IMG/VR virus record: IMGVR_UViG_3300047320_000285
Location: 1 to 64,000 of that record
Direction: 5' to 3' (one strand)
DNA length: 64,000 nucleotides
Positions 3,941 through 64,000 of this stretch are shown piece by piece; positions within the stretch are counted from its first letter, which is position 1; every line of letters begins with the position of its first letter. Both the position numbers and the translations under genes were made by a program. Under the pieces are notes generated by a model. It was not told the DNA's origin, did not search any database, and saw only the letters and a list, made by a program, of their open reading frames with translations.

Positions 3941-5279
3941 TTTCTTCAAAGCCGCCTGCAAGGCCCATTGCTTTCGCCGCAAGCAATGGGTGATCAGTGC
4001 GTTCTCGCTGGTTGCGGAAGGCCCGGAAGACTGGAAGCGTGACCCGTACCCGTACCGGATTGTGTCGACCCCGATGGGCTACTTCTGTGTGGATCCGGAT
4101 GATCATACGCAGCTCCTGCCGATTGAAGCGGAGCCGGATCTGAAACTCATGCGCGTACCGCTCTTTACAGCCACTGAGCAGTTCGTGATGATCCCGGGCG
4201 ACCTCCCTAACTACGGTACCATGCCGGGTGAAGACAAGCCCGTCAAGACCACCTACGGTAACTTCCTGTGGAACTGGATGGTGTTGTGCTGGGCACTGGG
4301 TAACAAGGTCGCGTACGTCAACGATCGGATTGCCCCGGGGGACTTGGAAGAGCTGATCCTCAAACGCCTGCAAGACGACCCCCAAGCCGGGGACCCCGTG
4401 CCCAAGGCGATTGACCGGGTGGCACCGATCTGGACCTCGGAGTATCTGCAGGTGGTGGAAGCGGCGTTCTATAGCACCGGCTTTACCCAGTTGTTCGTAC
4501 CGGCCGACACCCGCAAGTCGATGACGGCCCCGCCGGGGCTGGCTGAATACAAGGCCAAGCTGATCGAGGAGAACAAGGACCGGCTGCATGATCCGGCCGT
4601 GATTGCTGAGATGGATGCCAAGCTGATCAAGTTTGACAGCGAGTATCTGAAAGGGGACGAGTCCGAAGGCTTCCTGATCTCCGGCAAGTCGCGCACCACG
4701 GTGCGCCGTAAGCTGTTCCTGTCGCTCGGCGGTGAACCCGGCCTCGATGAAGAATCGGGGAACGTGGAGTTTATCCCCAACTCGCTCACCGAAGGCTGGG
4801 ATATCAGCAAGTTCCCGGTGATGAACAACACCCAACGGGCCGGTTCGTTTAACCGTTCGGCGCAAACCATGCTGGGCGGGGAGTCGGTCAAGTGGTTGCT
4901 GCGCGCGTCCTCCAACATGCAGGTGACGATGGACGACTGCGGTACCCAGCTGGGCGTGCCGACGGAGTTCACCGAGAAGTCGATCCAGAAGTATCTCGGC
5001 TTTCATGTGGTGGCTGCCGGCGGGCCGAAAGAGATTACCGAGGCTGACGCTGGCACCTACGTCGGCAAGAAGTTCATGCTGCGCTCACCGTTGTTCTGTA
5101 AGCTGGAGAAGACCGACTACTGCAAGATTTGTGTGGGTCCACGGTTGGCGTTGAACCCGACCGCGCTCTCCTCGGCGGTGACCGAAGTGGGCTCGACCAT
5201 CATGCTGATCTTCATGAAGGCCGCGCACGCGCGAAATCTGGCGGTGGCTCACATGGACTACCTTAGTGAGATCCAGTAA
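3927..5279 (+). CDS. Phage multisubunit RNA polymerase beta-prime C-terminal subunit (virion RNAP, phiKZ gp80-like)
   Basis: MDDCGT, LRSPLFC..TDYCKICVG (Zn site like RpoC VRSxxTC...CxxCYG) and trigger-loop-like AVTEVGSTIMLIFMKAAH. Split beta-prime subunits are characteristic of phiKZ-like phages. Confidence 0.9.
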   Translation: MNKADFFKAACKAHCFRRKQWVISAFSLVAEGPEDWKRDPYPYRIVSTPMGYFCVDPDDHTQLLPIEAEPDLKLMRVPLFTATEQFVMIPGDLPNYGTMPGEDKPVKTTYGNFLWNWMVLCWALGNKVAYVNDRIAPGDLEELILKRLQDDPQAGDPVPKAIDRVAPIWTSEYLQVVEAAFYSTGFTQLFVPADTRKSMTAPPGLAEYKAKLIEENKDRLHDPAVIAEMDAKLIKFDSEYLKGDESEGFLISGKSRTTVRRKLFLSLGGEPGLDEESGNVEFIPNSLTEGWDISKFPVMNNTQRAGSFNRSAQTMLGGESVKWLLRASSNMQVTMDDCGTQLGVPTEFTEKSIQKYLGFHVVAAGGPKEITEADAGTYVGKKFMLRSPLFCKLEKTDYCKICVGPRLALNPTALSSAVTEVGSTIMLIFMKAAHARNLAVAHMDYLSEIQ

Positions 5280-37184: not shown

Positions 37185-37610
37185 ATGATGAGTAAGATTT
37201 TTTGGCCGAACTATCTGTTCCATGCTGACTTCAGTGCGGATCAGGCCGAGCTGGCAGAGATCCCGCTGGGGGCAGTCAGTGCGGATACGGCGACCTTGCT
37301 GGCGGCGACGCTCTCGACCCATGACACCGGTGAAGGCCGGGCGTTGTGGACCGATCAAGCAGCTAACGCGTGGTCGCTCGAAGGGGTGGAAGTGACGTAC
37401 AACGGTCAGAACAGTTCGCTGTTCCCGACCAAGTATATCCACAACACCGTACTGGGGATTAAGTTCCCGGCGGATTCTGTCACGCCGCCTGCAGGTACGT
37501 TGCTGTATCTGCAGTACGACACGTCGGCTAACCCCCCGACCATTGCGGATCCGGCACCCGAGGAGCCTGCTCCCACGGAACCGACCGACGACTCAACCCC
37601 GCCGGCATAA
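37185..37610 (+). CDS. Tail-fibre family paralog, C-module only, with Pro/acidic tail (141 aa)
   Basis: GRALWTDQAANAWSLEGVEVTYNGQN...GTLLYLQYD resembles the C-module of the 34739 gene. Confidence 0.75.
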   Translation: MMSKIFWPNYLFHADFSADQAELAEIPLGAVSADTATLLAATLSTHDTGEGRALWTDQAANAWSLEGVEVTYNGQNSSLFPTKYIHNTVLGIKFPADSVTPPAGTLLYLQYDTSANPPTIADPAPEEPAPTEPTDDSTPPA

Positions 37611-37686
37611 GTCGATTCTGGGTCACCTTCTCACGAGGGTGACCTGGTATCATCTTTCCCGTGTTTGTTTTTCATTCGAGGTAATC

Positions 37687-40055: not shown

Positions 40056-42386
40056 ATGCCTATTCACGACATGTGGTCGTACGACGCGGCAGTGCAGGGG
40101 GCCACCGACGTGTCCACTGGTACCAGCCTCGCAGCGTATGTTGAAAACGGCCTGTATAACCAGTACAGCGGTTTGCCGGGCATGTTGTATAAGAACACCA
40201 GCGCTACGGCGGCGCTCGGCGTAGACGGCTTCCTGACGCTGACGGCGGCCGGTACGCTGAACGCCTGCTTGCTGGTGCAAGCCAAGGAGGTGCAGGACTG
40301 GTCGGTCGCTACGCAATACTGGCTGGGGTTCCGCACCAAGACCACCAGTCAGAACGTGGCCACTGCCCACGTGTTCAAGCTGGTTGACGTACCGGGCATG
40401 ACCAACGCGTCGGTGTTTCTGTTGGAGTCGGATTTGACGGCCGCAGGCGCTAACGTTTCCGGGACCGAGTATTACGTCGAGGTCTTTGTCGATCGCGTGA
40501 ATCTCGTCTATCAGGTCTGGGTCAATGGTATCCAGATCAAGAATGGCGCGATCAGCGCGGCCTCGGTGATCGCCAATGGCGGGAGCTACTACGTCTACGG
40601 CGCGACCGGCAGTCCGGCCAACCCGGTCAATGGTAATAACCGGTCGTTTCGGGATTACTATTTCGTCGATGTCGATGCAATCAAGACGCCGGGTCGACTT
40701 GGTTCGGTCCGGTCTTCGCCCCAGATCACTCCGCTCCCGAGTGCGCCGAACAACGGCTCGCTGTATCAGTCCACGATCTCCGCCACGCAGTCGAAGTTCG
40801 GTGGCTCGTCGCTGTCGGTGGGTGCTGCAGCCGCTTCGGTGGTGACGGTACCGGATAGCCCGGCGCTGCGCTTGGGGGTGACGGGAGACTGTACGGTCGA
40901 GTGCTGGGTCTATTACACGGGGGGTGGTACGACACCGGTGGTGTTCGGCAAACAGATCAACAACCTGCCGAACTACGCTCACCTCACGATGAGTAGCGGT
41001 AACTGGGTGTTCTATACGGACAGCGGCGCAGCCGTGATGACGGTAGCCTCCGGCGCGATCACCAATACGTGGGTGCATATCGCTGCGGTCAAACAAGGTA
41101 CGACGTGGACCCTGTATCAGAATGGGGTGGCGCTCGGCTCAGTGAACAATAACGGCACGTTCGGCAATAACAGCGCACCGTTCTTGATTGGTAACTGGGG
41201 TGGTCTCAACTCGCAATGGCTCGGGTTCATCGACGAGTTCCGTATCAGTAACATCGCCCGTTACACCGCAGCCTTTACACCGCCCACGCAGGTCTTTACA
41301 CCGGACGCAAACACACTTGCGCTGTGGCACATGGAGAGCAGTGTTCTGGGGCAGATTCTGGATTCGGTCCCAGCCTTTACACCAACCACTCTGCCCACCT
41401 CGCCCAATGCAGTAGGCTATAGCGCGCAGCTGCTGGGTTCGGCTGGTTTGTCGACTACGCAGGCCAAGTTCGGCACTAGCTCGTTTGTGACCAACGGCGT
41501 GGCGGGCTCGTGCGCGCAGATCCCGGACGCACCGCAGTTGCGCTTGATCAACGACTGGACGATCGAGTTCTTTACGTACAACCCGTCGCCGGCTACGGTA
41601 ATGATGTACCTGAATAAGGGCACCAACGCGTATTTGTTTAACAATGCTGGCACGCTCGGTCTGTCGCTCGATCCGGCGAACTCATTGGTGATCAACGTGG
41701 CGGGTCTTCTGAAAGCTAATCAGTGGCAGCATATCGCGGTCACCAAGCTCGGTCTGAATGTGCAGTTGTGGGTTGACGGAGTATTGGCGGGTTCACTGGT
41801 GGCGGCACTCCCCAACGGCACGTTCGGTAATGTGGCCAGCCCGTATCAGATCGGCATGTGGACCAACAACACCGACGAGATGGTGGGTTTCATGGATGAG
41901 TTGCGCATCAGTAACATCGCCCGTTACATCGCACCGTTCACCCCGCCGACTCAGCAGTTTGTGGTCGACGCCAATACACTGGTACTGATGCACTTTGAGT
42001 CGGTGTTCAATGGCATGCTGGCTGATGATGCCTGCAACGTTGCAGACTTGCTGCAAACGCCTTATCTGGCACCCCCCGGTGTGTTGCCAATGCTGGTAAC
42101 CTCGCCGACTAACGATCCGGTGACTGTGCCGTTGGGTGCACCGACCCCCGGTAAGTTGTTGGCCGTCGATTTCCGGCTGGGGATCAAAGCCAATAATGGG
42201 CCGGCCAGCATGTCGGGACAACTGAATCAAGGCAGCAACAATCAGGCTACCCCTACCCTACAATTGACCGATAACAGTCTGGGCTACGCGCGACGTCTCG
42301 CACTGACGACTGCGGCGCCGGATGGCGGGGCTTGGACACAGGCCAAGATTGGCACCACGTCTTTGGTGCTGACGCCTAATACCTAA
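40056..42386 (+). CDS. Tail fibre / receptor-binding protein with two tandem LamG domains (776 aa)
   Basis: N-terminus paralogous to the 37687 gene (MPIHDMWSYD / QDWSVATQYWLGFRTKT); two LamG repeats. Confidence 0.85.
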   Translation: MPIHDMWSYDAAVQGATDVSTGTSLAAYVENGLYNQYSGLPGMLYKNTSATAALGVDGFLTLTAAGTLNACLLVQAKEVQDWSVATQYWLGFRTKTTSQNVATAHVFKLVDVPGMTNASVFLLESDLTAAGANVSGTEYYVEVFVDRVNLVYQVWVNGIQIKNGAISAASVIANGGSYYVYGATGSPANPVNGNNRSFRDYYFVDVDAIKTPGRLGSVRSSPQITPLPSAPNNGSLYQSTISATQSKFGGSSLSVGAAAASVVTVPDSPALRLGVTGDCTVECWVYYTGGGTTPVVFGKQINNLPNYAHLTMSSGNWVFYTDSGAAVMTVASGAITNTWVHIAAVKQGTTWTLYQNGVALGSVNNNGTFGNNSAPFLIGNWGGLNSQWLGFIDEFRISNIARYTAAFTPPTQVFTPDANTLALWHMESSVLGQILDSVPAFTPTTLPTSPNAVGYSAQLLGSAGLSTTQAKFGTSSFVTNGVAGSCAQIPDAPQLRLINDWTIEFFTYNPSPATVMMYLNKGTNAYLFNNAGTLGLSLDPANSLVINVAGLLKANQWQHIAVTKLGLNVQLWVDGVLAGSLVAALPNGTFGNVASPYQIGMWTNNTDEMVGFMDELRISNIARYIAPFTPPTQQFVVDANTLVLMHFESVFNGMLADDACNVADLLQTPYLAPPGVLPMLVTSPTNDPVTVPLGAPTPGKLLAVDFRLGIKANNGPASMSGQLNQGSNNQATPTLQLTDNSLGYARRLALTTAAPDGGAWTQAKIGTTSLVLTPNT

Positions 42387-43470: not shown

Positions 43471-46353
43471 ATGTCTACAACTTTTCGCAAGACCGCCGCC
43501 GTCACATGGACGAAGGACCCGACTTCCGTTTCCTTGCGAAATGCGAAAGCGGTGGCCTTCGCCAGTGATGTCGGCGGTAACTTGCGTAACTTGCAGGGGT
43601 ATGCGTTCCAGAGTCCGCTACCCGGCGGGAATCTGCGCACTATCCGCGGTTACGCCTTTCAGTCAGTGAAACCGGCCTTGCCCCTCAATGTCACGGGGGA
43701 CTTGGCGCTGTACGCACTGATCAACACCAACAACATCGCACTGAGCCCGTGGTCGGCCAGTAACTCGACGCTGGGTGTACCGAGCGCGTTAGGTACACCG
43801 CTGGCGAGTGGTCAGAATACGCAGGTCAGTCTGACGGCCAAGCAGAGTTCGGGTTACAGTGGGGCGATGACGTTTCAGTACGCCCGTCGTAATCTCGCGG
43901 ATGCTTTTCCGACACCGGTGGCGATTACCGTACCGGGCAGTGCGACGACGATCTACGCGCAGCTGGCGATGATCAACACGAAGTACGCGATGAACCTGAC
44001 GCAGGCGGACGTGGTGGATGGTCCGATTGCAGCAGGTGCCGCCAGCGTAGTACTGACTGCCAAGTCGACCAGCTGGTTGTTTCTGCCGGGCACCACCGCA
44101 ATTGCTGGTAGCCCGCCGACACTGGCCTCAGTGCTCACGGAGCCGAACCTGCCGGGCTTTACCAATGTCGCTGGGGTGGGTCCGGGTTATCCGTACGCGC
44201 AGTCAGTCTTGCAGATGCACTTTGAAGGCTCTGGTGCTGCTCTGGCGGCCGATAGCTTCGGGCATCCGATGACGACTGTGGGTAACGTGGGGGTGAACTC
44301 GACTTTCACGTCCAAGTTTGGCACGGGCTGTAGTGGTTCAACCGGCGTGGGGATTTACTACACGACGGTGGATCGCGGTGATCTGCGTCTGGGCGCAGAC
44401 TTCACGATTGAGTTCTGGATGTATTGTTCCAACGTCACCACGGCCACCGGTACGTTGCTGGCGAAGGGTGCTTCGTTGACCCAAGCGTCGATGCAGTTGG
44501 TGAACGCCAACTTGGTGATCAACTCGGATCAAACTCCCGGTTTGATTAACGTCGCGCACGGCGTTGCCGCTAACACTTTCACGCATATTGCGTTAGTGAA
44601 GGCTGCGGGTGTATGGACGTTGTATGTGGGTGGAGTGGCAAAAGCAACGATTACCAAGACCGATACGTTTGGTGTGAACGCTTCGCCGTTGGTGATTGCC
44701 AACAGCTTCAATGGCGCAGCACCGCCACCGACGTTTATGGACGAACTGCGGATCAGCAATGGTATCGCTCGGTACACGGCTGCCTTCACGCCGTTGACCT
44801 ATGCATTCGGTGACGTATCGACGACGACCTTCGATGGTTTGCCGACGGGTAACGCCCAGTTATTGATGCACTTTGACGGGGCCGATACCAGCACGGTGTT
44901 CAAGGAAGAGAATGGTCGACCGGTGACGAACACGGGTGGTCAGTTGACGACGGCGTTGGCTCAGTTTGGTCCGAGTTCGCTGGCACCGTTGCCGGTCAGC
45001 AGCAACGTCGTGACCCTGCCGTCTGACCACAGTCTCCAGTTGTCGGATAACTGGACGATGGAAGCGTGGGTCAACAACCTCAGTGCAGGTCAGACAGGGG
45101 TGGTGTTCTCGAAGGATAACGGTGCGTCACCGTTCGCCCACCTGACGTATGCGGCGGGTTTCTGGCAGCTGTTCCTCGATGGCGCGGCGGTCGCGATGTC
45201 GGTGGCCGCCAGCACGGTGTTGAACACGTGGATCCATATCGCGGTGGTTAAGCGGCGCGGTACCGTGGCGATTTACCAGAACGGTGTCTCGCTGGGCTCA
45301 CTTGCCGCCGCCAGTACGTTTGGTAACAACAATTCGCCGTTCCAGATTGGTAACTGGGGTGGTCTGGCCAATCCGTTCCAAGGTTACATCGACGAGGTCC
45401 GCGTGAGCAAGGTGGCGCGTTACTTTGGTAACTTCACCCCGCCTACCGCACCGTTTGCATTGGGTGCGGCTGACCGGATGACGCTCACACAAGCCTTCCA
45501 GAATAACGGTATTTTCTGGGTTGCACCGACTAGCGCCACCACGATTCTGGCCCAGCTGGCGACATGGAACACGATGTCTGGTGTACCTTTGAGTGCGACC
45601 GATTTGGCGGATGGTCCGATTGCTGCCAATGCTTCCAGTGTTACGCTGACGGCAGCAGCCACCAGTACCAGTCTGGTGCCGGGTAGTCAGATTACCATCA
45701 CGGCCAAGAACACTGCGTTGCTCATGCATTTCGATGGTACCAGTGGTGCGCAGACGTGGACCGACGAACGCGGGCATGCAATGACGACGTCGGGTGGGAC
45801 AGTTGCCACGTTACAGCTTTCCAACGTGCAGGCGAAGTTTGGTGGTACGTCGTTCCTCAGTACGGGCGCAGGCGCAATCATCACCCCGTCAGCGCCGGAG
45901 CTTATGTTGGGGGTCACCACGGACTTCACCATTGAGTTCTTCTTTAACATGATCGGTGTCGTGGCTGGTCAGGTGATGTACGAGAAGGGCAACTCAGGCG
46001 CGCGGGTGCAGTACAACGCCGGTAAGCTGTATGTGTATTCCGACCAGTCAGCGAATACGGACGGGGGTCAGTTGCTGACCGTGGCAGCGAGCTTTATCAA
46101 GACGGCTCAATGGCAGCACATCGCCATCGTCAAGTTCAACGGTACGTGGACTGCGTATGTGGATGGGGTGGCGCAAGTCAGTGTCAGTGCACCGACGCAG
46201 ACCTTCGGCAATAACACCAACAACGTGATTATTGGTAACTACTTCAACGGTGCAAACCCGCAGAACGGTTACATGGACGAACTGCGGGTGAGTAACGTCG
46301 CACGTTATACGGCTGGCTTTACGCCGCCCACGGCGCCATTCGTGCTGGATTAA
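43471..46353 (+). CDS. Tail fibre / receptor-binding protein: family N-module + three LamG domains (960 aa)
   Basis: GQNTQVSLTA...GYSGAMTFQYARRNL module; three MHFxG...KFG...DELRxS..ARY..FTP repeats. Confidence 0.85.
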   Translation: MSTTFRKTAAVTWTKDPTSVSLRNAKAVAFASDVGGNLRNLQGYAFQSPLPGGNLRTIRGYAFQSVKPALPLNVTGDLALYALINTNNIALSPWSASNSTLGVPSALGTPLASGQNTQVSLTAKQSSGYSGAMTFQYARRNLADAFPTPVAITVPGSATTIYAQLAMINTKYAMNLTQADVVDGPIAAGAASVVLTAKSTSWLFLPGTTAIAGSPPTLASVLTEPNLPGFTNVAGVGPGYPYAQSVLQMHFEGSGAALAADSFGHPMTTVGNVGVNSTFTSKFGTGCSGSTGVGIYYTTVDRGDLRLGADFTIEFWMYCSNVTTATGTLLAKGASLTQASMQLVNANLVINSDQTPGLINVAHGVAANTFTHIALVKAAGVWTLYVGGVAKATITKTDTFGVNASPLVIANSFNGAAPPPTFMDELRISNGIARYTAAFTPLTYAFGDVSTTTFDGLPTGNAQLLMHFDGADTSTVFKEENGRPVTNTGGQLTTALAQFGPSSLAPLPVSSNVVTLPSDHSLQLSDNWTMEAWVNNLSAGQTGVVFSKDNGASPFAHLTYAAGFWQLFLDGAAVAMSVAASTVLNTWIHIAVVKRRGTVAIYQNGVSLGSLAAASTFGNNNSPFQIGNWGGLANPFQGYIDEVRVSKVARYFGNFTPPTAPFALGAADRMTLTQAFQNNGIFWVAPTSATTILAQLATWNTMSGVPLSATDLADGPIAANASSVTLTAAATSTSLVPGSQITITAKNTALLMHFDGTSGAQTWTDERGHAMTTSGGTVATLQLSNVQAKFGGTSFLSTGAGAIITPSAPELMLGVTTDFTIEFFFNMIGVVAGQVMYEKGNSGARVQYNAGKLYVYSDQSANTDGGQLLTVAASFIKTAQWQHIAIVKFNGTWTAYVDGVAQVSVSAPTQTFGNNTNNVIIGNYFNGANPQNGYMDELRVSNVARYTAGFTPPTAPFVLD

Positions 46354-51661: not shown

Positions 51662-51698
51662 GTTTTTGTTGTGACACGGCTTGGCGCGTTTTGCGCCG

Positions 51699-51729
51699 GG
51701 GGCTTCCTAGTGGAGCCTCTTTTTTTTTT
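51699..51729 (+). terminator. Intrinsic terminator
   Basis: ggggcttcc-tagt-ggagcctc followed by a long T run. Confidence 0.8.
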
Positions 51730-51785: not shown

Positions 51786-51868
51786 CTACTTGGATGCGCA
51801 TTCGCAAGTCCGTAGGTAGGGAGGTCCTTGACTCCTGTTTCCAATCGTTCTTATACGCAGAGAACATC

Positions 51869-52699
51869 ATGCAAGCAGATCAACTAACAACCTACCTTCC
51901 GTTCATTGAACTGATGGATGAGGTTGAAACCACCAAGGTACTGTGGGCGCTGACGATTCTTTTGATCGGGGCGCTCATTCGTATCTACTTTCTGAATACT
52001 CGCGTCAGAAAGCTTGAGGGGAGCGAGCCGGAACCTACGGCCACGGGGTGGGTCCGTCCGACCCGCCGGGTGATCCTCGACGTGCCCAACCGTACCATGC
52101 GCGCGGCTATTCATGGCAAGCGCAGTTATCCGAATCAGGCGTTGTGCGAAATCTGTCCGTGGAGTACGGAGAACCTCGCCGCGCTGAGCATGTACATGCG
52201 CCAGTCGGTGAGCATCGGAGAGATTGCTTTACAACGCCGGATTGCCACCGTCTCGGCGATTGTCCACGACTTTGCTATCCCGGCCGAGATGATGTTGCTC
52301 GACGAGGAAGCGTTGACGATGTATCTGGATTACCGTAATCGCGTCAGCCCGGCATTAGGCAGTCTCGAGCTGATGCAGTATGCGCACGTCGGGTGTGACG
52401 AAGACGTGGATGAAGCGCATCTGACTCAGCTGTTGCGGCTCACCGTGCCGGTGACGGGGTGGCTGCTGAAATTTGCTGAGAAAGAAGCCTGGCCGGTGTT
52501 TGACATGTTCTACCGGGACCTGCGTTCGGCCGGGGTGATTACCACGCTTGACCGGGCAGATCTTAAAAGCATCATCACGGCGTACAGTGCGTATTCGAAA
52601 ATGCTCGTGCCAAGCGAGTACATTCTGAATAACGCCACCGCATTTTACATCTATCGTCGCATCAGCACGATGGAGTTGTTTGAGCCAATCGAGCAATAA
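51869..52699 (+). CDS. Membrane-anchored hypothetical protein (276 aa)
   Basis: TM segment VLWALTILLIGALIRIYFL near the N-terminus; start at ATG 51869. Confidence 0.7.
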   Translation: MQADQLTTYLPFIELMDEVETTKVLWALTILLIGALIRIYFLNTRVRKLEGSEPEPTATGWVRPTRRVILDVPNRTMRAAIHGKRSYPNQALCEICPWSTENLAALSMYMRQSVSIGEIALQRRIATVSAIVHDFAIPAEMMLLDEEALTMYLDYRNRVSPALGSLELMQYAHVGCDEDVDEAHLTQLLRLTVPVTGWLLKFAEKEAWPVFDMFYRDLRSAGVITTLDRADLKSIITAYSAYSKMLVPSEYILNNATAFYIYRRISTMELFEPIEQ

Positions 52700-52713: not shown

Positions 52714-53436
52714 ATGAATAAGCAAAAAGGAATGTTCGTCGTGCTCGAAGGAGTCGACGCTGCCGGGAAGACCACCAATTTTCCCTACGTCAAGCAGTGC
52801 CTCGAAGAAAAGGGGCTGCAGGTTATCACCACCCGGGAGCCGGGTGGTACACGACTGGGCGAAGAGATTCGCAACCTGATTCTCTCGGGACCGATGATGT
52901 GTCCCAAAGCCGAGTTGCTGCTCTTTGCCGCCGCGCGCGCTCAGCACATCGAAGAGAAGGTCAAGCCTGCGGTAGACGCCGGGTACGTGGTGCTGTGTGA
53001 TCGCTACCTGATGTCGACCTACGCGTATCAGGGCTACGGACGGGGCTTTAAGAATCTGTTGCACACGGTGGAACTCATCGCGCACAACAACTTCTATGCT
53101 GACCACACGCTGTTCTTTAACGTCGAGTTTGCAGAATCCCGGCGTCGTGTACGGTCGCGCACCGACAACAACCGCATCGACGTCGAGGCCGATGCCTTCT
53201 TCAAGAAGGTGTATGCGGGTTATCAGGATGCCATCGCGATGAAGCTCGTGCCGAACCTGCACGAGATCGATTCCAACCCCGGGCTCGATCAGGTCCGTGC
53301 CCAAATCAAGGAGTGGGTTGACAATGTCTTCTATCCGAGCTATCTGAAAAAGCAAGAACCCGAGGCTCCCGCGTTCGGTAGAGACACGTACAGCAACAAG
53401 TACATGACGCTCGAGGAGGCACGGGGAAATGGATGA
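52714..53436 (+). CDS. tmk: Thymidylate (dTMP) kinase
   Basis: P-loop VLEGVDAAGKTT, TREPGGT, LLFAAARAQH, DRYLMSTYAYQG. Confidence 0.95.
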   Translation: MNKQKGMFVVLEGVDAAGKTTNFPYVKQCLEEKGLQVITTREPGGTRLGEEIRNLILSGPMMCPKAELLLFAAARAQHIEEKVKPAVDAGYVVLCDRYLMSTYAYQGYGRGFKNLLHTVELIAHNNFYADHTLFFNVEFAESRRRVRSRTDNNRIDVEADAFFKKVYAGYQDAIAMKLVPNLHEIDSNPGLDQVRAQIKEWVDNVFYPSYLKKQEPEAPAFGRDTYSNKYMTLEEARGNG

Positions 53437-53659
53437 GTTTGTCGGATTGATGTTTCGCTTTGCATTGATCTGCCTGACGCTGAGCTGCTTTGTCGCGTAT
53501 CGCTCTCGGGCGAACTACGAGTGGTGGCTCACGCATCGCCGCACCGTGTATCTGACCACGGCCCAGACGATGCATTCGTTGTCACAGACTGCGTTTATCG
53601 TGGGACGATGGGCGCTGTTTTTCGCTGTCGTCTCGTTCCTGTTGTTTATCAACCAGTAG
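53429..53659 (+). CDS. Small two-TM membrane protein (76 aa)
   Basis: Two hydrophobic helices; overlaps the tmk stop. Confidence 0.7.
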   Translation: MDEFVGLMFRFALICLTLSCFVAYRSRANYEWWLTHRRTVYLTTAQTMHSLSQTAFIVGRWALFFAVVSFLLFINQ

Positions 53660-53666
53660 GTGCAAC

Positions 53667-53804
53667 ATGAAGTACATTGAGATTGCCGCGTTCTTGGCGT
53701 TTCTGGCATGGCTGACGTACATGCTGGATCCGTACCACGGTAAGCCGCGCCCGTTGTCTCACGCGCTGCACCGCACCGATCTCGGTGGCTTTGACGCCGC
53801 CTAA
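53667..53804 (+). CDS. Small single-TM protein (45 aa), absent from the ORF track
   Basis: MKYIEIAAFLAFLAWLTYMLDPYHGKPRPLSHALHRTDLGGFDAA; RBS TAGGTG. Confidence 0.55.
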   Translation: MKYIEIAAFLAFLAWLTYMLDPYHGKPRPLSHALHRTDLGGFDAA

Positions 53805-53818
53805 CCCAAGGAGTTCTG

Positions 53819-54010
53819 ATGCTGTTTGCTGCCCCACCTGCCCCGCCACCCATCGAGCCCACCACGCTTACCCAAGTCGCTCCGCTCCCGGCGGGGTATC
53901 ACAATCAACGCCTGACCGGTGCACCGGCTATCTGGTCGCTCAAGGGTAACCCCAAAGCCCTGCTGGACGACCAGTCGTTCCGTTTTCCGCCGGATCAGAA
54001 ACAACCGTAA
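53819..54010 (+). CDS. Small Pro-rich protein (63 aa)
   Basis: RBS AAGGAG. Confidence 0.55.
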   Translation: MLFAAPPAPPPIEPTTLTQVAPLPAGYHNQRLTGAPAIWSLKGNPKALLDDQSFRFPPDQKQP

Positions 54011-54072
54011 TTTTTACGGATCCGCATCATGAAGTGGTCGTACTAACACTTACTAATCAACAAGGAAGAACA

Positions 54073-55425
54073 GTGCCTCATCACCAACACATCCTCGCGC
54101 TCGATGCGCGTTTTCTGAACTACAAGCGCTTCTTCGTCAATCGCTTCAAGGACGAAAAGAAGACTGACGCCGAGTTGTCGGGCATGGGTCTTGTGCAGGG
54201 CTTCAACGAAGCGACCGCCGATTACTTCGACATCTGGTACGACAAAGCTCGCGAGCATCTGGTGATTGCCCAGCGTGACGGCCTCGAACACGCACCGCAG
54301 TTCCGCCAGATCCTGCCGTACACGGTGATTGCGCAGAACCCGGTACGCGGTACGGATTTCTCGCAGGATGTCTTCACCGTCTATCAGCGCACCAAGCAAG
54401 TCGGCGAGTCGCGACTGGCTGGGAACTTCTCGATTGGTGGAGGTGGCCACATCGACATCGCGGATCTGATCTTCGACACGACGACGAGCATCGTCGATCT
54501 GAAGCAAACGATCCTGCGGGCGTTGTTCCGGGAACTGATCGAAGAATTTATCTTCATCGACGAACACGGTGTGGAAGTCACCCCGGAGCGGCTGGTGGGC
54601 GCGATCACGTTCGTACCGGCGGGCTTCATTCGTGACGACGCGAATACCGTCGGTCAGGTCCACCTCGGTGTGGTCAACGTGGTGTACGTGCCGCACACGT
54701 GGACGGTCAAAGTGCGCCCGCCCAAGGAAGGCGAAGAAGCCGAGCATCTGGATGCCCCGTCGGGTACGGCTGCAGAAATCCTCTCGCGGGGTGCGAAGTT
54801 CGAGAACTGGTCGCAGATCCTGCTGGAAGAATTCGCTCAAGTGGGCCGCATGGTCTCAGCGACGGCCAAGCCGGCGAATCCGAACACGGTCATCGCGCTG
54901 ACGGATGCCAACGATACGCTCGATTCGTTGGTCGCGCAATTCGGTGTTAGCAAGGAAGAACTGCTGCGACTGAACCCAGTGCTGCAACAAGCGGTGGCCA
55001 ATGGCGGCCAGTGCGAGAACGGCTGGCGCCTGTGGATCACCGATCCGGATGCGACGTTCGAACCCGAGGTGAAGGACGCCACGCCAGTCGAACGGGTGAT
55101 AGCAGTGCCAACCGCGGTGACAGTCCAGCCCGGTGAAACTTTCGGTCAGATCTGTGCCCGCTTCGGACTGGATCGTTCGCTGGTAGCCCGCTTGAATGAT
55201 CTGTCGACCTTTGATGACATCATCGACGTGCGGGTCGGTCAGCGTCTGTATCTGACGGTACCCAAGCAGATCCAGTTGCGGCCGGGTGATACGCTCGAGA
55301 AGATCTGCGAACGCTTTGGCCTCGCGATCAATGTGATTCGGGTGATCAACCGTTTCGCGCCCAACGAAACGATGATACCGGGTCGCATGGTCACGTTGCA
55401 GGCAGACGAGTCGGCGATTTCCTAA
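54073..55425 (+). CDS. Nudix-fold phosphoesterase (COG4112-like) fused to three LysM-like domains (450 aa)
   Basis: FRQILPYTVI, YQRTKQVGESRLAGNFSIGGGGHID, LFRELIEEF; then DTLDSLVAQFGVSKEELLRLNP, VQPGETFGQICARFGL...RLN, LRPGDTLEKICERFGL...IN. GTG start after AAGGAAG. Confidence 0.8.
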   Translation: MPHHQHILALDARFLNYKRFFVNRFKDEKKTDAELSGMGLVQGFNEATADYFDIWYDKAREHLVIAQRDGLEHAPQFRQILPYTVIAQNPVRGTDFSQDVFTVYQRTKQVGESRLAGNFSIGGGGHIDIADLIFDTTTSIVDLKQTILRALFRELIEEFIFIDEHGVEVTPERLVGAITFVPAGFIRDDANTVGQVHLGVVNVVYVPHTWTVKVRPPKEGEEAEHLDAPSGTAAEILSRGAKFENWSQILLEEFAQVGRMVSATAKPANPNTVIALTDANDTLDSLVAQFGVSKEELLRLNPVLQQAVANGGQCENGWRLWITDPDATFEPEVKDATPVERVIAVPTAVTVQPGETFGQICARFGLDRSLVARLNDLSTFDDIIDVRVGQRLYLTVPKQIQLRPGDTLEKICERFGLAINVIRVINRFAPNETMIPGRMVTLQADESAIS

Positions 55426-55444
55426 GCAATCACAACAAACCACC

Positions 55445-55475
55445 AGCAGACGGGTCAAACCGTCTGCCCTTTATG
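55445..55475 (+). terminator. Hairpin followed by TTTATG
   Basis: gcagacgg-gtcaaa-ccgtctgc-cctttatg. Confidence 0.6.
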
Positions 55476-58825: not shown

Positions 58826-59299
58826 ATGGAAGCCAAGAAGAATACCGACGGCTCGTTTGAAGTTGTCCTCGGGAACTCGGGTGTTCGAAACAAGAACGGT
58901 CTGGTCTTCCCGACCGAGCAACTGCGCAACGAAATCGTCAAGCTCAATGTGCGAGCCAAACAAGGTACCGCATTGGCTGAGGTGGGTTTTCCGCAACGCC
59001 GACCAGGCGAGGATCCCGATAACTTCCGACGTCGCTTTACCACGGTCGATCTGGAGCGTGTCTGTGCGCGCTTTACGGATTTCCGGGTGGAGAATGACAA
59101 CCCTGCAGATCCGCGCATTGTGGCAATCGTGCAGCCAGCGGGTCCGTTTGCTAACGTGGCGCGTGATCATCTCGAAGCAGGCGGCGAGGGCGTGTACTTC
59201 GGTGCACGCTTTTACGCAGACGGCCAGATGGAAGATAACAAACCCAAGCTGGCACTGAGAAACTTCATTACGTTTGACCTCGTCGCGGAGCAACCATGA
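58826..59299 (+). CDS. Prohead-protease (T4 gp21-like) paralog lacking catalytic residues (157 aa)
   Basis: NKNGLVFP...ALAEVGFP...VDLERVC resembles NRNxRxYP...ALGELxHP...VD; His replaced by Phe and no GVSSRG serine. Confidence 0.6.
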   Translation: MEAKKNTDGSFEVVLGNSGVRNKNGLVFPTEQLRNEIVKLNVRAKQGTALAEVGFPQRRPGEDPDNFRRRFTTVDLERVCARFTDFRVENDNPADPRIVAIVQPAGPFANVARDHLEAGGEGVYFGARFYADGQMEDNKPKLALRNFITFDLVAEQP

Positions 59300-60004: not shown

Positions 60005-61018
60005 ATGAAACAGTTTCACGACAATCTGCAATTCATTCTCGATAACGGTTCGTGGAAGACCAACCGCACCCAGTACGCGTCGCTGATGGTGCCGGGTCTG
60101 ACCATGCGCTTCGATTTGCGCCAAGGCTTTCCGGCCGTCACCACCAAGAAGCTGGCGTTCAAGTCGGCGCTCGGTGAACTGTGTGGTTTCCTGAAGCCGG
60201 TCCGCAGCGCGGTTGACATGCGGGCACTCGGCAGCAAGGTGTGGGATCAGAACGCCAATGAGAACGCGCAGTGGTTGGCGAACCCGTTCCGTAAGGGCGA
60301 AGACGATCTGGGCGATGTGTACGGGGCGATGTGGCGGGAATGGCCGGGCTTCAAGCTGGTCCGGACCGAGGACTGGACCCACGAGATCGACAATAAGCTG
60401 AAAGCTGACGGATGGCACTGCGAAGAAGTCTTCGAAGGTGCGCTCTACAGCAAATCAATCGACATGCTCGGCGACTGCGTGCGTACCATCATCCTGAACC
60501 CGGACGATCGGCGCATTCTGTTCCATGCGTGGAACCCAGCCAAGCTCGACGAGATGGCACTGCCGCCGTGTCATCTGCTGTATCACTTCCTGCCCAACAA
60601 GGACACCAAGGAACTGGCGCTGTGCATGACGCAGCGCTCAGCCGATTACTTCTTGGGCATTCCGTTTAACATCGCGTCGTCTGCTTTGCTGCTGCACATC
60701 GTTGCACGCCTGACGGGCTACACGCCGACGTGGCTGACGATTACCACCAACGACAGCCACATTTACGAAAACGCGATTGACGCGACCAAGGAGTTGCTCA
60801 CGCGCGAACCGTACCCGCTGCCGCGTCTGGAGATCAACCCAGAGATGCCGACTTTCGAGCGTTTCCATGAGTGGAATGCCGAGATGAAGCTGATGGGGCT
60901 TAATCAGCATGATGTCGGCGAACACGCCGTCAGTTGGCTGGCGAAGCTGGATCCGACGTGGTTCACGCTGGAAGACTACCAGTGCCACGACAGCATCAAA
61001 GTCGACATGGCGGTTTGA
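60005..61018 (+). CDS. thyA: Thymidylate synthase
   Basis: ELCGFL, WDQNANEN..WL.NP.RKG.DDLG.VYG..WR, RRILFHAWNP, ALPPCH (catalytic Cys), QRSADYFLGIPFNIAS. Confidence 0.95.
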   Translation: MKQFHDNLQFILDNGSWKTNRTQYASLMVPGLTMRFDLRQGFPAVTTKKLAFKSALGELCGFLKPVRSAVDMRALGSKVWDQNANENAQWLANPFRKGEDDLGDVYGAMWREWPGFKLVRTEDWTHEIDNKLKADGWHCEEVFEGALYSKSIDMLGDCVRTIILNPDDRRILFHAWNPAKLDEMALPPCHLLYHFLPNKDTKELALCMTQRSADYFLGIPFNIASSALLLHIVARLTGYTPTWLTITTNDSHIYENAIDATKELLTREPYPLPRLEINPEMPTFERFHEWNAEMKLMGLNQHDVGEHAVSWLAKLDPTWFTLEDYQCHDSIKVDMAV

Positions 61019-62236: not shown

Positions 62237-63004
62237 ATGAATATCGGCGATGTCCCGACTCTCGATGAGTCGGATGTATTCAAGTGGGTGGCCAACCAAG
62301 CGTACTGCCCGCGCAACCTGCTGGCGTTCGTGATCCGTAACGGCATCCCAGAAGCAGTCGCCGACGAGACGATCGTGGCGGATACGGTGCGCTGTTTGCT
62401 GGAGTTGCACGCACAAGAAATCTCCGGCCTGAACACGGGCTTCTCTCATGCCTCGCCGCGCGAGAAGCAGGTGAAGTTCAAGTTCATCGAAAAGTACGGC
62501 CGGCCCATTGATTCGTTCCTCACGTGGTGGTACGACAAATATCAAACCGCGTGGAATCGCGGCGATGTCGGTGACGACGGTACACTCGACGTGATGTTTC
62601 TCGAACCCGATCCGACCCACACCAAGGTCACGCACGCGATTTACATGTACCGTATGCGACCGATCGAATACTCAGGGATCGAATCGAAGCGTGATCTGTA
62701 CACCCCCCGGGCATTTCCGGTGCCGGAGAAACCGAAGCCGACGTTCTGGCAGCGGTTTGTGGCGTCTTTGAAAGGGGATCCGATCAAAGACGCCATCAAG
62801 AAGCTGCAGGAAGCACCGTCAGTCAAGCCGACGGTGTTGAATGTGACGTTCACGGGCGAGACCTCGACGGGACCCATGGTTATCAAGTTCGCCCAAGAGC
62901 TGCTCGATCAGGCCAACGTCGCGGCCACCAATCCGTACGTGAAGCCGGACCCCAAGGTGTTCGGGGTGTTGCGTCGTAAAGCGATCGACGTCTACCAGTT
63001 CTGA
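62237..63004 (+). CDS. Hypothetical protein (255 aa)
   Basis: RBS TAGGA; typical codon bias. Confidence 0.75.
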   Translation: MNIGDVPTLDESDVFKWVANQAYCPRNLLAFVIRNGIPEAVADETIVADTVRCLLELHAQEISGLNTGFSHASPREKQVKFKFIEKYGRPIDSFLTWWYDKYQTAWNRGDVGDDGTLDVMFLEPDPTHTKVTHAIYMYRMRPIEYSGIESKRDLYTPRAFPVPEKPKPTFWQRFVASLKGDPIKDAIKKLQEAPSVKPTVLNVTFTGETSTGPMVIKFAQELLDQANVAATNPYVKPDPKVFGVLRRKAIDVYQF

Positions 63005-63061: not shown

Positions 63062-63168
63062 CGAAAAGAGCCTGTTAGAATTAATGAAACAGGTAGATGC
63101 TTTGAGGGGTGATGCCCAGTCATCTCTCACTTACACTAATCAACACTAAGATACAAGGAGTATGTGTC

Positions 63169-64000
63169 ATGACGACGATTGCATGGGACGGTAAGGTACT
63201 GGCAGTAGACAGCCGTAGTTCTTCCCCAGAGACTCGGCAAGAAGCTACCAGTGATCCCAAACGCACTCGCATCTGCTTTCATTGCGAACGTCCAGCATGG
63301 ACGGGTAGTGATGATTCGCAGAAGCTCGTGATTCTGCCTAAGGTCACATGGCGTGGTGAACGGATTCTCGCGGCAGCGGGCACCGGTATGGCACGCGACT
63401 GTGATCGGATCCGGCACGTAATGCAACGCCCGCCCGAAGGCCAGACGGAGTTCGAAAAGATCTGGGAAAGCTACAGTTCGTTGGCACCGCGTAAAATTGC
63501 TGGGATGCAACCATTTGGTGCCATCTCTGCACACTTCGTGGTGGTGACGGAAACACGTCTATGGGTGCTAGAGTTTGAAGGCAACTCGCTCAGTAGTTAT
63601 CTGGAACCGCGCGATGTCATGTTTGCCAAAGGCTCGGGTCGGGATGCTGCGATGTTGGCAATGACGATCATGGGGGCAACTGCCGCCAATGCGGTATGGG
63701 CAGCTCGGGCGATCGACCCGGCGACTGGGGGTCCAGTCAAGTGGGTCGATACCACCGAACAATTGGTGGAGGGCAAAATGACTCGGTCGCTGGAGCATGA
63801 AGAAGCACCGCTGAGTCGCGAAGAAGCGGCGGCGTATGTGCGCAGTGGTTTTACCGTTCGTCCGGAGAAACCTGAGCTGGTCGGCATCCACGAATCGGCG
63901 CCTTCGAAAGAAGAACCGCTGACCGCAGAGGTTGCGAGTCAGATTGCCGAACAGGCACGTAGTAATGGCAAACCGGCTGTCAAGAAAGTTGCCGTCAAGA
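63169..64000 (+). CDS. HslV/proteasome-beta-like Ntn (Thr) protease, 3' end runs off the window
   Basis: Manual translation: MTTIAWDGKVLAVDSR...AAAGTG...FAKGSGRDAAMLAMTIMGATAANAVWAARAIDPATGGPV; RBS AAGGAG; no stop found in the part translated. Confidence 0.8.
   Translation, partial: MTTIAWDGKVLAVDSRSSSPETRQEATSDPKRTRICFHCERPAWTGSDDSQKLVILPKVTWRGERILAAAGTGMARDCDRIRHVMQRPPEGQTEFEKIWESYSSLAPRKIAGMQPFGAISAHFVVVTETRLWVLEFEGNSLSSYLEPRDVMFAKGSGRDAAMLAMTIMGATAANAVWAARAIDPATGGPVKWVDTTEQLVEGKMTRSLEHEEAPLSREEAAAYVRSGFTVRPEKPELVGIHESAPSKEEPLTAEVASQIAEQARSNGKPAVKKVAVK

What the first reader, a model, noticed from the sequence alone, without database searches (positions are those of the whole stretch)
54073..55425. 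Nudix hydrolase fused to three LysM domains with no export signal
Seen: a COG4112-type Nudix fold (GGGGHID...RELIEEF) followed by three LysM-like repeats, with no signal peptide or TM helix. Established: LysM binds GlcNAc-containing glycans such as peptidoglycan, and Nudix enzymes cleave nucleoside-diphosphate-X substrates. Inference: cytoplasmic LysMs could capture UDP-GlcNAc/UDP-MurNAc-peptide or lipid II precursors for hydrolysis, remodelling cell-wall synthesis and nucleotide pools. Alternatively it may destroy immune nucleotide signals. It sits between tmk and thyA.
Basis: partly seen in the sequence, partly recalled or inferred. Interest (0 to 1): 0.6.

Follow-up and report, generated by a model that had tools for sequence, protein, structure and literature searches.

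The report
Phage Nudix enzyme with LysM tail
A giant soil phage carries a leaderless enzyme that joins a YmaB/TM1382-type Nudix pyrophosphatase, most likely part of the phage's thymidine-nucleotide supply line, to three sugar-binding LysM modules; this pairing is conserved in one lineage of giant phages and has not been described or explained.

Summary
Window 54073-55425 (+) encodes a 450-aa protein. Residues 1-258 are a TM1382/YmaB (COG4112) type Nudix domain with its catalytic R-E-x2-E-E helix intact. Residues 272-442 are three canonical LysM repeats. There is no signal peptide or TM helix.

The fusion is a conserved core gene of a lineage of phiKZ-like jumbo phages that includes Burkholderia phage FLC9 gp286. 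Of 2553 relatives, only the eight closest 50%-identity clusters include LysM carriers.

- The catalytic family sits beside dNTP genes again and again (tmk, thyA, DHFR, RNR, dCTP deaminase).
- It is fused to DHFR in two sister clusters.
- The LysM clade keeps every family-invariant residue.
- This phage has dCTP deaminase, ThyA and Tmk but no dUTPase.

My best reading is a cytoplasmic dNTP pyrophosphohydrolase, probably dUTP to dUMP, with a cytoplasmic LysM tether. The tether's ligand is unresolved: lipid II-type precursors, as for SpoVID, or a protein partner. I rate it a new variant of a known kind, of moderate interest.

The parts
54073..55425 (+). Nudix-LysM gene (450 aa, GTG start, stop included)
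   Evidence: ORF. RBS AAGGAAG at 54062-54068. Orthologue N-termini coincide. Self-match in G000.
54073..54846 (+). TM1382/YmaB (COG4112) type Nudix domain, residues 1-258
   Evidence: Family profile vs PDB 3E57 E=6e-42. Foldseek 3E57 TM 0.78. BFVD nickie TM 0.90. phrog_8902 E=2e-41. phrog_8902 rings only in B. subtilis and T. maritima among the 14 controls.
54436..54450 (+). G-G-G-G-H motif (residues 122-126), a family signature upstream of the catalytic helix
   Evidence: G122, G124, G125 and H126 are invariant in 47 sequences.
54529..54546 (+). Nudix catalytic helix core R-E-L-I-E-E (residues 153-158)
   Evidence: E154, E157 and E158 invariant; R153 in 46 of 47. Aligns to the MutT Nudix helix in the profile search.
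54886..55038 (+). LysM repeat 1 (residues 272-322), the repeat found next to the Nudix domain in both sub-clades
   Evidence: Local LysM HMM 4.5e-18. Modelled as beta-alpha-alpha(-alpha)-beta. Present in P0002-P0009, P0011, P0012 and P0051.
55108..55254 (+). LysM repeat 2 (residues 346-394)
   Evidence: Pfam LysM best stretch 350-394. Genome scan 55117-55254, 27.1 bits, over the cut-off.
55267..55398 (+). LysM repeat 3 (residues 399-442)
   Evidence: Genome scan 55279-55389, 21.5 bits, over the cut-off. Local HMM 1.2e-16.
55446..55467 (+). G+C-rich hairpin 21 nt after the stop; possible terminator of the tmk...Nudix-LysM unit
   Evidence: Consensus scan only.
52714..53436 (+). Thymidylate kinase, conserved upstream neighbour
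   Evidence: PF02223 8.5e-40. TIGR00041 155.6 bits vs cut-off 83. Same position in L011, L012, L013 and L039.
53429..54010 (+). Three small conserved ORFs between tmk and the gene: 53429-53659 (76 aa, 2 TM), 53667-53804 (45 aa, 1 TM), 53819-54010 (63 aa, soluble)
   Evidence: Translations and hydropathy; homologues in L011, L039 and L038.
60005..61018 (+). Thymidylate synthase (337 aa), downstream member of the conserved block
   Evidence: PF00303 4e-77. TIGR03284 194 bits vs cut-off 108.

Best explanation
The gene encodes a cytoplasmic, two-module enzyme of a phiKZ-like jumbo phage.

**Module 1 (residues 1-258).** This is a YmaB/TM1382-type Nudix pyrophosphohydrolase with an intact metal-binding R-E-x2-E-E helix. 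It most likely cleaves deoxynucleoside triphosphates to the monophosphate plus pyrophosphate, as part of the phage's own thymidylate pathway. My specific guess is that it turns the dUTP made by the phage dCTP deaminase into dUMP for the phage ThyA. That step then leads through Tmk to dTTP, and it also keeps dUTP out of phage DNA. The phage has no dUTPase of its own.

**Module 2 (three LysM repeats on flexible linkers).** This is not the determinant of catalytic specificity. It is a tether or adaptor that must act in the cytoplasm, because that is where the Nudix substrates are. The ligand is unresolved. The two live options are GlcNAc-MurNAc precursors on the inner face of the membrane, as for the SpoVID LysM and lipid II, or a protein partner, as for SipL-SpoIVA and SpoVID-SpoVK.

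**Shown:** the folds, the conserved catalytic residues, the absence of a leader, conservation of the fusion, and the gene neighbourhoods and fusions.

**Inferred:** the substrate class, the dUTP preference, the compartment, and the role of LysM.
For: **Fold and family.** Catalytic and family-invariant residues are retained.

**Precedent for activity.** YmaB is the last gene of the B. subtilis nrdI-nrdE-nrdF-ymaB operon. It is reported to have dNTP pyrophosphohydrolase activity in preliminary work (PMC5960316).

**Neighbourhoods of the Nudix family.**
- Nickievirus has RNR-beta, thyA, DHFR, the gene, then tmk; IMG/VR locus L015 has the same order except that no DHFR match was found.
- PaBG and Noxifer have it near dCTP deaminase and thyA.
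- Geobacillus phage GR1 has dUTPase, the gene, thioredoxin, then guanylate kinase.
- Further IMG/VR loci have RNR-beta, tmk or thyA within 6 kb.

**Synteny of the LysM clade.** Parts of one block, tmk, small ORFs, the gene, DUF1653, S80 protease, thyA, tail tube, recur in all seven contigs; none shows every element.

**Rosetta-stone links.**
- DHFR is the adjacent upstream gene in FLC9.
- DHFR is fused N-terminally in P0012 and P0051.
- An ESM-Atlas cluster of dCTP-deaminase proteins matches the Nudix domain structurally (a lead only).

**Pathway gap.**
- G000 has dCTP deaminase (TIGR02274, 160 bits vs 93), ThyA and Tmk.
- It has no trimeric or dimeric dUTPase, MazG, dCMP deaminase or second Nudix gene.
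- FLC9, PaBG and Noxifer likewise have dCTP deaminase and no separate dUTPase.

**LysM.**
- It is retained across proteins only 37-47% identical in the Nudix domain.
- Within the family it is found only among the eight nearest clusters of 2553 relatives.
- It is the only LysM in the genome.
- No leader or TM segment appears in any orthologue.
- Cytosolic LysM precedents exist.
Against: - No enzyme of this family has a published, fully characterised substrate. The YmaB activity is cited only as preliminary.
- Pfam NUDIX does not recognise the protein. The canonical G-x5-E and trailing G-U of the Nudix box are absent: Q145 and I160 occupy those positions.
- GR1 carries a dUTPase right beside its copy, so the family is not simply a dUTPase substitute.
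- Only 6 of the 23 IMG/VR loci (4 distinct) showed dNTP genes by BLAST.
- The phage dCTP deaminase could be bifunctional, or the host Dut could serve, so the 'gap' may not be real.
- Nothing here shows what the LysM repeats bind. Three tandem LysMs on linkers is the classic architecture for avidity to a glycan polymer, and the cytoplasm does not obviously contain one.
- The docking test of the LysM region on the Nudix domain gave no verdict.
Confidence: 0.5

Rival explanations
1. The cytoplasmic LysM repeats capture GlcNAc-bearing wall precursors (UDP-GlcNAc, UDP-MurNAc-peptide, lipid II). The Nudix domain then cleaves their pyrophosphate bond, which cuts host wall synthesis and returns UMP to the nucleotide pool.
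For: - The LysM repeats are canonical and three in number.
- A cytosolic LysM binds lipid II in B. subtilis SpoVID (PMC10659427).
- Nudix enzymes that cleave nucleoside-diphosphate sugars exist among the fold matches, for example 5C7Q.
- Small membrane-protein genes lie just upstream in most members.
Against: - The catalytic family without LysM is linked to dNTP genes, not wall genes.
- The fused clade keeps tmk/thyA synteny and gains DHFR by adjacency or fusion.
- All invariant residues outside the catalytic helix, which I take to be substrate-contacting, are the same in fused and unfused members.
- As far as I know, LysM has little affinity for single GlcNAc units such as those in UDP-GlcNAc.
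- No mur, mra or other wall-synthesis genes lie nearby.
Confidence: 0.1
2. The LysM tail is an ordinary peptidoglycan anchor that works outside the cytoplasm. The protein would be packaged in the virion and ejected into the periplasm, or would reach the wall through holin lesions. The Nudix domain would then act on something there, or act only before export.
For: - Leaderless LysM proteins are normal in phages (endolysins), and the LysM part of the model matches phage lysins.
- The gene lies in a block that also holds virion genes: S80 prohead protease, tail tube and internal head proteins.
- Conserved small 1-TM and 2-TM ORFs lie directly upstream.
Against: - Nudix substrates and Mg-nucleotides are cytoplasmic, so no rationale exists for a dNTPase on the wall.
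- The DHFR fusion in sister clusters makes no sense outside the cytoplasm, because DHFR needs NADPH.
- No lytic domain is present in the protein or its neighbours.
- No virion proteomics are available for any member.
Confidence: 0.12
3. The Nudix domain destroys host immune or alarm nucleotides (cyclic oligonucleotides, ADPR-derived signals, ppGpp, NAD-capped RNA). The protein would therefore be a counter-defence factor.
For: Nudix enzymes are chemically capable of such reactions. Jumbo phages carry many counter-defence genes. These points rest on general knowledge only.
Against: - There is no match to PADLOC models.
- There are no defence-related neighbours.
- Neighbourhood and fusion partners are consistently dNTP enzymes.
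- Cellular homologues occur in an RNR operon.
Confidence: 0.05

Closest known systems
Thermotoga maritima TM1382 (PDB 3E57) and Bacillus subtilis YmaB (COG4112 'MutT-family phosphoesterase')
   Same: The N-terminal 258 residues belong to this family. The family profile matches 3E57 at E=6e-42 and the fold TM-score is 0.78. The same signature is present: G-E-S-R-L, S-I-G-x-G-G-H and R-E-x2-E-E. phrog_8902 rings only in B. subtilis and T. maritima among the controls. YmaB is linked to RNR and has preliminary dNTP pyrophosphohydrolase activity.
   Different: Those proteins are single-domain, about 200 aa, and cellular. This one carries a 190-residue LysM tail and is a phage protein. I did not align YmaB itself; its membership is inferred and from my own knowledge.
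Burkholderia phage FLC9 gp286 (BDD79805.1, 'hypothetical protein') and the metagenomic proteins P0002-P0009, P0012, P0048-P0051
   Same: They share the Nudix + LysM architecture and the same syntenic block.
   Different: FLC9-type members have one LysM after the Nudix domain, then about 270 residues of unknown domains and a terminal LysM. DHFR is adjacent or fused. G000-type members have three LysM repeats and no DHFR gene in the genome. None has been described functionally.
Stand-alone phage homologues (Nickievirus, PaBG gp60 'putative phosphoesterase (MutT family)', Noxifer gp301, Staphylococcus phage 6ec-like, Geobacillus GR1)
   Same: They have the same Nudix domain, 31-40% identical, with structural TM-scores up to 0.90. 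Several have dNTP-gene neighbourhoods.
   Different: They have no LysM or other extra domain.
Cytoplasmic LysM proteins: B. subtilis SpoVID, C. difficile SipL, E. coli Kbp
   Same: These are leaderless proteins whose LysM acts in the cytosol. SpoVID binds lipid II, SpoIVA and SpoVK. SipL binds SpoIVA. Kbp is BON+LysM without a signal sequence. Weak NCBIfam matches of the tail to SafA and SpoVID LysM models were seen.
   Different: None is an enzyme fusion, none is a phage protein, and each has a single LysM. Nothing shows that the phage LysMs share these ligands.
dUTPase (Dut), T4 gp56 dCTPase/dUTPase, and E. coli NudI (pyrimidine dNTP pyrophosphohydrolase)
   Same: The proposed reaction (dNTP to dNMP + PPi, feeding thymidylate synthase) is the one these enzymes perform (own knowledge). 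NudI is among the fold matches as 6DT3.
   Different: The relationship is a different family, or only distant superfamily kinship. The activity of this protein is untested.
LysM-bearing phage endolysins
   Same: They have leaderless tandem LysM repeats, and the tail matches them structurally.
   Different: This protein has no muralytic domain. Its catalytic partner is a nucleotide enzyme.

Membership tests
Nudix superfamily | Alpha/beta/alpha Nudix fold | tested here: met
   AF2 model with pLDDT 89. Foldseek returns 3E57 and more than 15 solved Nudix enzymes at probability 0.97 or higher.
Nudix superfamily | Nudix box G-x5-E-x7-R-E-U-x-E-E-x-G-U | tested here: inconclusive
   The core R153-E154-L-I-E157-E158 is present and conserved (E154, E157 and E158 invariant; R153 in 46 of 47). 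The upstream G-x5-E spacing and the trailing G-U are not kept: Q145 and I160 occupy those positions, and there is an insertion after G-G-H. The same deviation runs through the whole TM1382 family.
Nudix superfamily | Match to Pfam PF00293 over the gathering score | tested here: not met
   No match at E<=5 for P0001, or at E<=1 in the genome scan. Some relatives pass or nearly pass: P0015 scores 22.1 bits, and P0019 and P0032 have precomputed matches.
Nudix superfamily | Metal-dependent pyrophosphohydrolase activity | not testable with these tools
   Requires an enzyme assay.
TM1382/YmaB family (COG4112; phrog_8902) | Full-length sequence-profile match to family members | tested here: met
   Profile vs 3E57 E=6e-42 over 5-206 of 285 positions. 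phrog_8902 E=1.7e-41. 2553 relatives by phmmer.
TM1382/YmaB family (COG4112; phrog_8902) | Family signature residues (R68, E72, Q79, Y83, R106, G-E-S-R-L, S-x-G-x-G-G-H, H197, E244, W246) | tested here: met
   All are present in P0001. All are invariant in 47 sequences apart from the G and E of G-E-S-R-L (G111, E112), which are conserved in at least 90%; 11 of them remain invariant in the second set of 44 and the rest are near-invariant there or not listed.
LysM domain (PF01476) | Pfam match over the gathering score | tested here: met
   52.4 bits vs 20.9, in three stretches. Two repeats are individually over the cut-off in the genome scan.
LysM domain (PF01476) | Beta-alpha-alpha-beta fold | tested here: met
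   DSSP of the model for all three repeats. Foldseek matches to Ecp6, 4UZ2/4UZ3, CEBiP and MltD.
LysM domain (PF01476) | Binding of GlcNAc-containing glycans | not testable with these tools
   The D/E-T-hydrophobic motif in the beta1-alpha1 loop, and the L-N motif, are present in all three repeats of G000-type proteins. Binding itself needs pull-down or ITC.
Secreted or cell-wall-anchored LysM proteins | Signal peptide, lipobox or TM anchor | tested here: not met
   Maximum hydropathy 0.95. The N-terminus is polar and part of the fold. The other 14 LysM-carrying relatives checked also lack a hydrophobic N-terminus; P0011 and P0012 reach 1.6-1.7 at one internal stretch. Heuristic only.
dUTPase (functional class, not homology) | Homology to trimeric (PF00692) or dimeric (PF08761) dUTPase | tested here: not met
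   The only PF00692 signal in G000 lies inside the dCTP deaminase gene, and there is no PF08761 match. The protein would be an analogue, not a member.

The most novel reading that the evidence does not exclude
The three leaderless LysM repeats bind lipid II or related GlcNAc-MurNAc precursors on the cytoplasmic face of the host membrane, as the SpoVID LysM does. On this reading the protein, or its Nudix domain acting on the precursor's pyrophosphate, sequesters or destroys wall precursors while also processing dNTPs. It would be a jumbo-phage factor that couples arrest of host wall synthesis to phage DNA-precursor supply, or that pins the dNTP-synthesis machinery to the membrane.
Probability: 0.12. 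Interest if true: 0.8.

Novelty: new variant of a known kind. Interest (0 to 1): 0.5.

Why it matters
The TM1382/YmaB Nudix family is large (2553 relatives here) and recurs in phage and Bacillus dNTP operons, yet it has no firmly assigned substrate. The DHFR fusions, the tmk/thyA synteny and the missing dUTPase found here give a concrete hypothesis that can be tested at the bench: a pyrimidine dNTP pyrophosphatase feeding ThyA.

The LysM tail is the odd part. A glycan-binding module is conserved on a cytoplasmic nucleotide enzyme across a whole jumbo-phage lineage. If it binds lipid II-type precursors or a protein partner, it would extend the small set of cytosolic LysM functions (SpoVID, SipL, Kbp) to phages. 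It would also point to spatial organisation of nucleotide synthesis during jumbo-phage infection.

FLC9 is a cultured phage that carries an orthologue, so experiments are feasible.

Tried and rejected
- **Pfam NUDIX.** It did not match P0001, whole or split, nor the genome. Membership had to be shown by family profile and by fold.
- **Complex prediction.** Nudix domain (1-262) against the LysM region (268-450) scored 0.00, and the controls were not run. There is no verdict, so this is not evidence for or against docking.
- **PADLOC.** No match for the protein or three neighbours.
- **Extra FLC9-type domains.** tblastn of the middle and C-terminal domains of P0011 and P0012 against G000 found nothing significant. 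The ESM-Atlas feature search on that region found nothing usable.
- **Sequencing runs.** Only the probable source sample, a rhizosphere metagenome, holds the stretch. There is no RNA run, so expression could not be examined and read laying was not used.
- **Literature.** 'COG4112' gave 0 papers. 'LysM + Nudix + phage' gave nothing on this fusion. The FLC9 papers do not discuss gp286.
- **Holin idea, set aside.** The upstream 2-TM ORF could be a holin that exports the protein. I dropped this because there is no lytic domain nearby and the DHFR fusions argue for a cytoplasmic location.
- **Thymidine hypermodification, set aside.** ThyA here passes the thymidylate synthase equivalog cut-off. I did not test whether it is a hydroxymethylase.
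- **Not attempted.** I made no alignment to B. subtilis YmaB or SpoVID, because neither was available by reference. I did not test for a nucleus-forming (chimallin) status of the phage.
Full report
**1. What is at the coordinates**

The window is the first 64 kb of a 253,740-bp IMG/VR virus record with direct terminal repeats. It probably comes from a rhizosphere metagenome.

The phage is phiKZ-like. It has a split phage RNA polymerase beta subunit (phrog_2962, 3927-5279), internal head proteins and an S80 prohead protease (58826-59299).

The ORF 54034-55425 (+) is open. It coincides with the N-termini of orthologues. I accept 54073-55425, 450 aa (P0001).

**2. The Nudix half**

That support is strong.

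- phrog_8902, of unknown function, matches residues 46-256 at E=2e-41.
- A word search with residues 1-270 found bacterial proteins that their sources name 'predicted NUDIX family phosphoesterase'.
- A profile of 47 relatives (A1) matches PDB 3E57 at E=6e-42. That entry is Thermotoga TM1382, 'a putative Nudix hydrolase'.
- The AF2 model built on that alignment has mean pLDDT 89.4.
- Foldseek puts 3E57 first (TM 0.78 by target), followed by many solved Nudix enzymes.
- In BFVD the best matches are the homologues from phages nickie (TM 0.90), PaBG and Noxifer.
- Among 14 control genomes, phrog_8902 rings only in B. subtilis and T. maritima. That fits YmaB and TM1382.

Twenty positions are invariant in all 47 sequences:

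- G122, G124, G125 and H126;
- E154, E157 and E158 of the Nudix helix, with R153 in 46 of 47;
- R68, E72, Q79, Y83, R106, R114, H197, E244 and W246, among others.

The canonical G-x5-E spacing and the trailing G-U of the Nudix box are not kept. This holds for the whole family, not only this protein. The domain therefore looks catalytically competent, but it belongs to a divergent Nudix family.

**3. The LysM half, and no leader**

Pfam LysM matches at E=5e-14, 52.4 bits against a cut-off of 20.9, in three stretches. The repeats lie at residues 272-322, 346-394 and 399-442.

Each repeat is modelled with high confidence as beta-alpha-alpha-beta, and low-pLDDT linkers separate them. Structural matches include Ecp6, the T. 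thermophilus NlpC/P60 LysM pair, CEBiP, MltD and phage lysins.

No 19-residue window exceeds a Kyte-Doolittle mean of 0.95. The N-terminus is polar and forms the first strand of the fold. The other 14 LysM-carrying relatives checked likewise lack a hydrophobic N-terminus; two FLC9-type members reach 1.6-1.7 at one internal stretch. This is the only LysM-encoding gene in the phage genome.

**4. The fusion is conserved and clade-specific**

The word search found full-length relatives 55-74% identical on contigs of 112-259 kb. It also found Burkholderia phage FLC9 gp286, 633 aa and annotated 'hypothetical protein'.

An exhaustive phmmer search with the Nudix domain found 2553 relatives at E<=1e-3.

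- I scanned the 44 longest with Pfam.
- LysM occurs only in the eight nearest 50%-identity clusters (E<=1e-39). One of the eight, P0010, shows no LysM; at 295 aa on a 2.6-kb contig it may be truncated.
- Everything more distant, including 23 IMG/VR loci, lacks LysM.

LysM repeat 1, directly after the Nudix domain, is the repeat found in both sub-clades. Two of the eight clusters, P0048 and P0049, show only weak, more C-terminal LysM matches. The number of further repeats and extra domains varies.

The seven related contigs examined carry parts of one syntenic block: tmk, small ORFs, the gene, DUF1653, S80 protease, thyA and tail tube. No single contig shows every element.

The fusion is therefore an old, selected feature of one jumbo-phage lineage, not an assembly or annotation accident.

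**5. What the Nudix domain probably does**

The evidence is contextual, but it is consistent.

- *YmaB precedent.* YmaB closes the B. subtilis nrdI-nrdE-nrdF-ymaB operon. It is reported to have dNTP pyrophosphohydrolase activity in preliminary work (PMC5960316).
- *LysM-less phage copies.*
  - In Nickievirus the gene lies between DHFR and tmk, downstream of RNR-beta and thyA. IMG/VR locus L015 has RNR-beta, thyA, the gene and tmk in that order, with no DHFR match.
  - In PaBG and Noxifer it lies near dCTP deaminase and thyA.
  - In Geobacillus phage GR1 it lies between dUTPase and thioredoxin/guanylate kinase.
  - In phage 6ec it lies next to the DNA polymerase.
- *DHFR link in the LysM clade.* DHFR is the adjacent upstream gene in FLC9. 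It is fused to the N-terminus in P0012 and P0051.
- *Atlas lead.* An ESM-Atlas cluster of dCTP-deaminase-domain proteins matches the domain structurally. This is only a lead.
- *Gene content of G000.*
  - It encodes dCTP deaminase (TIGR02274, 160 bits against 93), ThyA (TIGR03284, 194 against 108) and Tmk (TIGR00041, 156 against 83).
  - It has no dUTPase of either type, no MazG, no dCMP deaminase, no DHFR and no second Nudix gene.
  - FLC9, PaBG and Noxifer show the same pattern of dCTP deaminase without a separate dUTPase.

The step dUTP to dUMP + PPi is thus the obvious vacancy, and a Nudix dNTP pyrophosphohydrolase could fill it.

Several caveats apply:

- GR1 has a dUTPase beside its copy.
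- The deaminase might be bifunctional.
- The host Dut exists.
- BLAST saw dNTP genes in only a minority of the IMG/VR loci.

I put about 0.55-0.6 on 'dNTP pyrophosphohydrolase in the thymidylate or dNTP supply' and about 0.3 on dUTP specifically.

**6. What the LysM tail may do**

Nudix substrates, and the NADPH needed by the fused DHFR, are cytoplasmic. The tail must therefore coexist with a cytoplasmic enzyme. Leaderless, cytosolic LysM domains have precedents:

[quoted passage not shown] It also binds SpoIVA and SpoVK (PMC10659427).
- The SipL LysM binds SpoIVA (PMC6436350).
- E. coli Kbp is BON+LysM without a signal sequence (PMC7806268).

The tail could therefore tether the enzyme to GlcNAc-MurNAc precursors at the inner face of the membrane, or to a protein partner. 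My tools cannot separate these two options.

A docking test of the tail on the Nudix domain returned no verdict. The full-length pTM is 0.60 despite pLDDT 89. That fits beads on a string, but it does not prove it.

Two small membrane-protein ORFs and one soluble ORF are conserved between tmk and the gene. Their relevance is unknown.

**7.

The idea that a cytoplasmic LysM could bind a wall precursor is respectable, given SpoVID. The proposal that the Nudix domain hydrolyses UDP-sugars or lipid II is not supported, for three reasons:

- The family's context is dNTP metabolism.
- The fused clade keeps that context and adds DHFR.
- Every family-invariant residue is unchanged in the fused clade.

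The immune-signal alternative found nothing in its favour. I rate the interpretation partly supported.

**8. Novelty and verdict**

No paper in the library describes a Nudix-LysM phage protein. The one orthologue from a cultured phage is annotated as hypothetical. Both domains belong to known families, so this is a new variant of a known kind.

The interest lies in two points. First, there is a testable substrate hypothesis for an uncharacterised but widespread Nudix family. Second, a glycan-binding module is conserved on a cytoplasmic nucleotide enzyme, which is unexplained. I score interest at 0.5.

Noticed in passing
window 53429-53659, 53667-53804, 53819-54010 (+): Three small ORFs between tmk and the Nudix-LysM gene are conserved in related contigs (L011, L039, L038). 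They are a 76-aa protein with two TM helices whose start overlaps the tmk stop, a 45-aa single-TM protein ending in L-G-G-F-D-A-A, and a 63-aa proline-rich soluble protein. FLC9-type contigs instead have a TM protein of about 155-160 aa (3-4 hydrophobic segments by the hydropathy scan), and L013 and L040 also a 60-63-aa 2-TM protein, upstream.
   Followed up: partly
window 51794-52699 (+): A 301-aa protein with one N-terminal TM helix lies immediately upstream of tmk. It is conserved in L011, L012 and L039 (274-284 aa) and has no family match. A strong terminator-like hairpin with a T-run (51698-51720) precedes it, so it may open the transcription unit that ends after the Nudix-LysM gene.
   Followed up: partly
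L012 12824-14793; L039 12125-13018; window 60005-61018: In relative L012 an R2K-type ATP-grasp gene (PF14243/PF18299) sits directly upstream of a long (405 aa) thyA. RlaP nucleotidyltransferase genes occur in L012 and L039. The window's ThyA is 337 aa, longer than the 266-position Pfam profile. I did not test whether these phages make a modified thymidine.
   Followed up: no
window 37543-40041, 40056-42386, 43471-46353 (+): Three consecutive large genes (832, 776 and 960 aa) each contain two or three copies of the same module (phrog_3545, phrog_13163 'baseplate wedge', phrog_701). They form a tandem paralogue array of virion proteins.
   Followed up: no
window 58826-59299 (+): The S80 (phiKZ gp175-type) prohead protease ORF is only 157 aa and covers profile positions 16-176 of 229. 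Relatives are similarly short (148-180 aa), so this looks like a compact version rather than a truncation.
   Followed up: partly
window 63109-63999 (+, runs off the window): An ORF matches phrog_1040, an HslV-family peptidase (E=8e-25). It lies downstream of a tail-tube-like gene (62237-63004).
   Followed up: no
L040 5261-6787: In one relative the DHFR-Nudix-LysM gene is followed by a periplasmic-binding-protein-family gene (Peripla_BP_6, 377 aa) and a thioredoxin. The first is unusual cargo for a phage.
   Followed up: no
P0011 residues ~310-570; P0012 residues ~515-749: FLC9-type orthologues share about 270 residues of unknown domain(s) after the first LysM, including a conserved W-D-V-N-V-P...G-Y-C-G-A-N-G-S-H segment. 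These have no Pfam match, no Atlas match and no counterpart in G000.
   Followed up: partly
G000 82226-83161 (L014 1012-1947): The phage dCTP deaminase ORF is 311 aa, and the deaminase domain occupies only residues 161-310. The N-terminal 160 residues or so are unassigned. FLC9 has a similarly long frame (332 aa).
   Followed up: no
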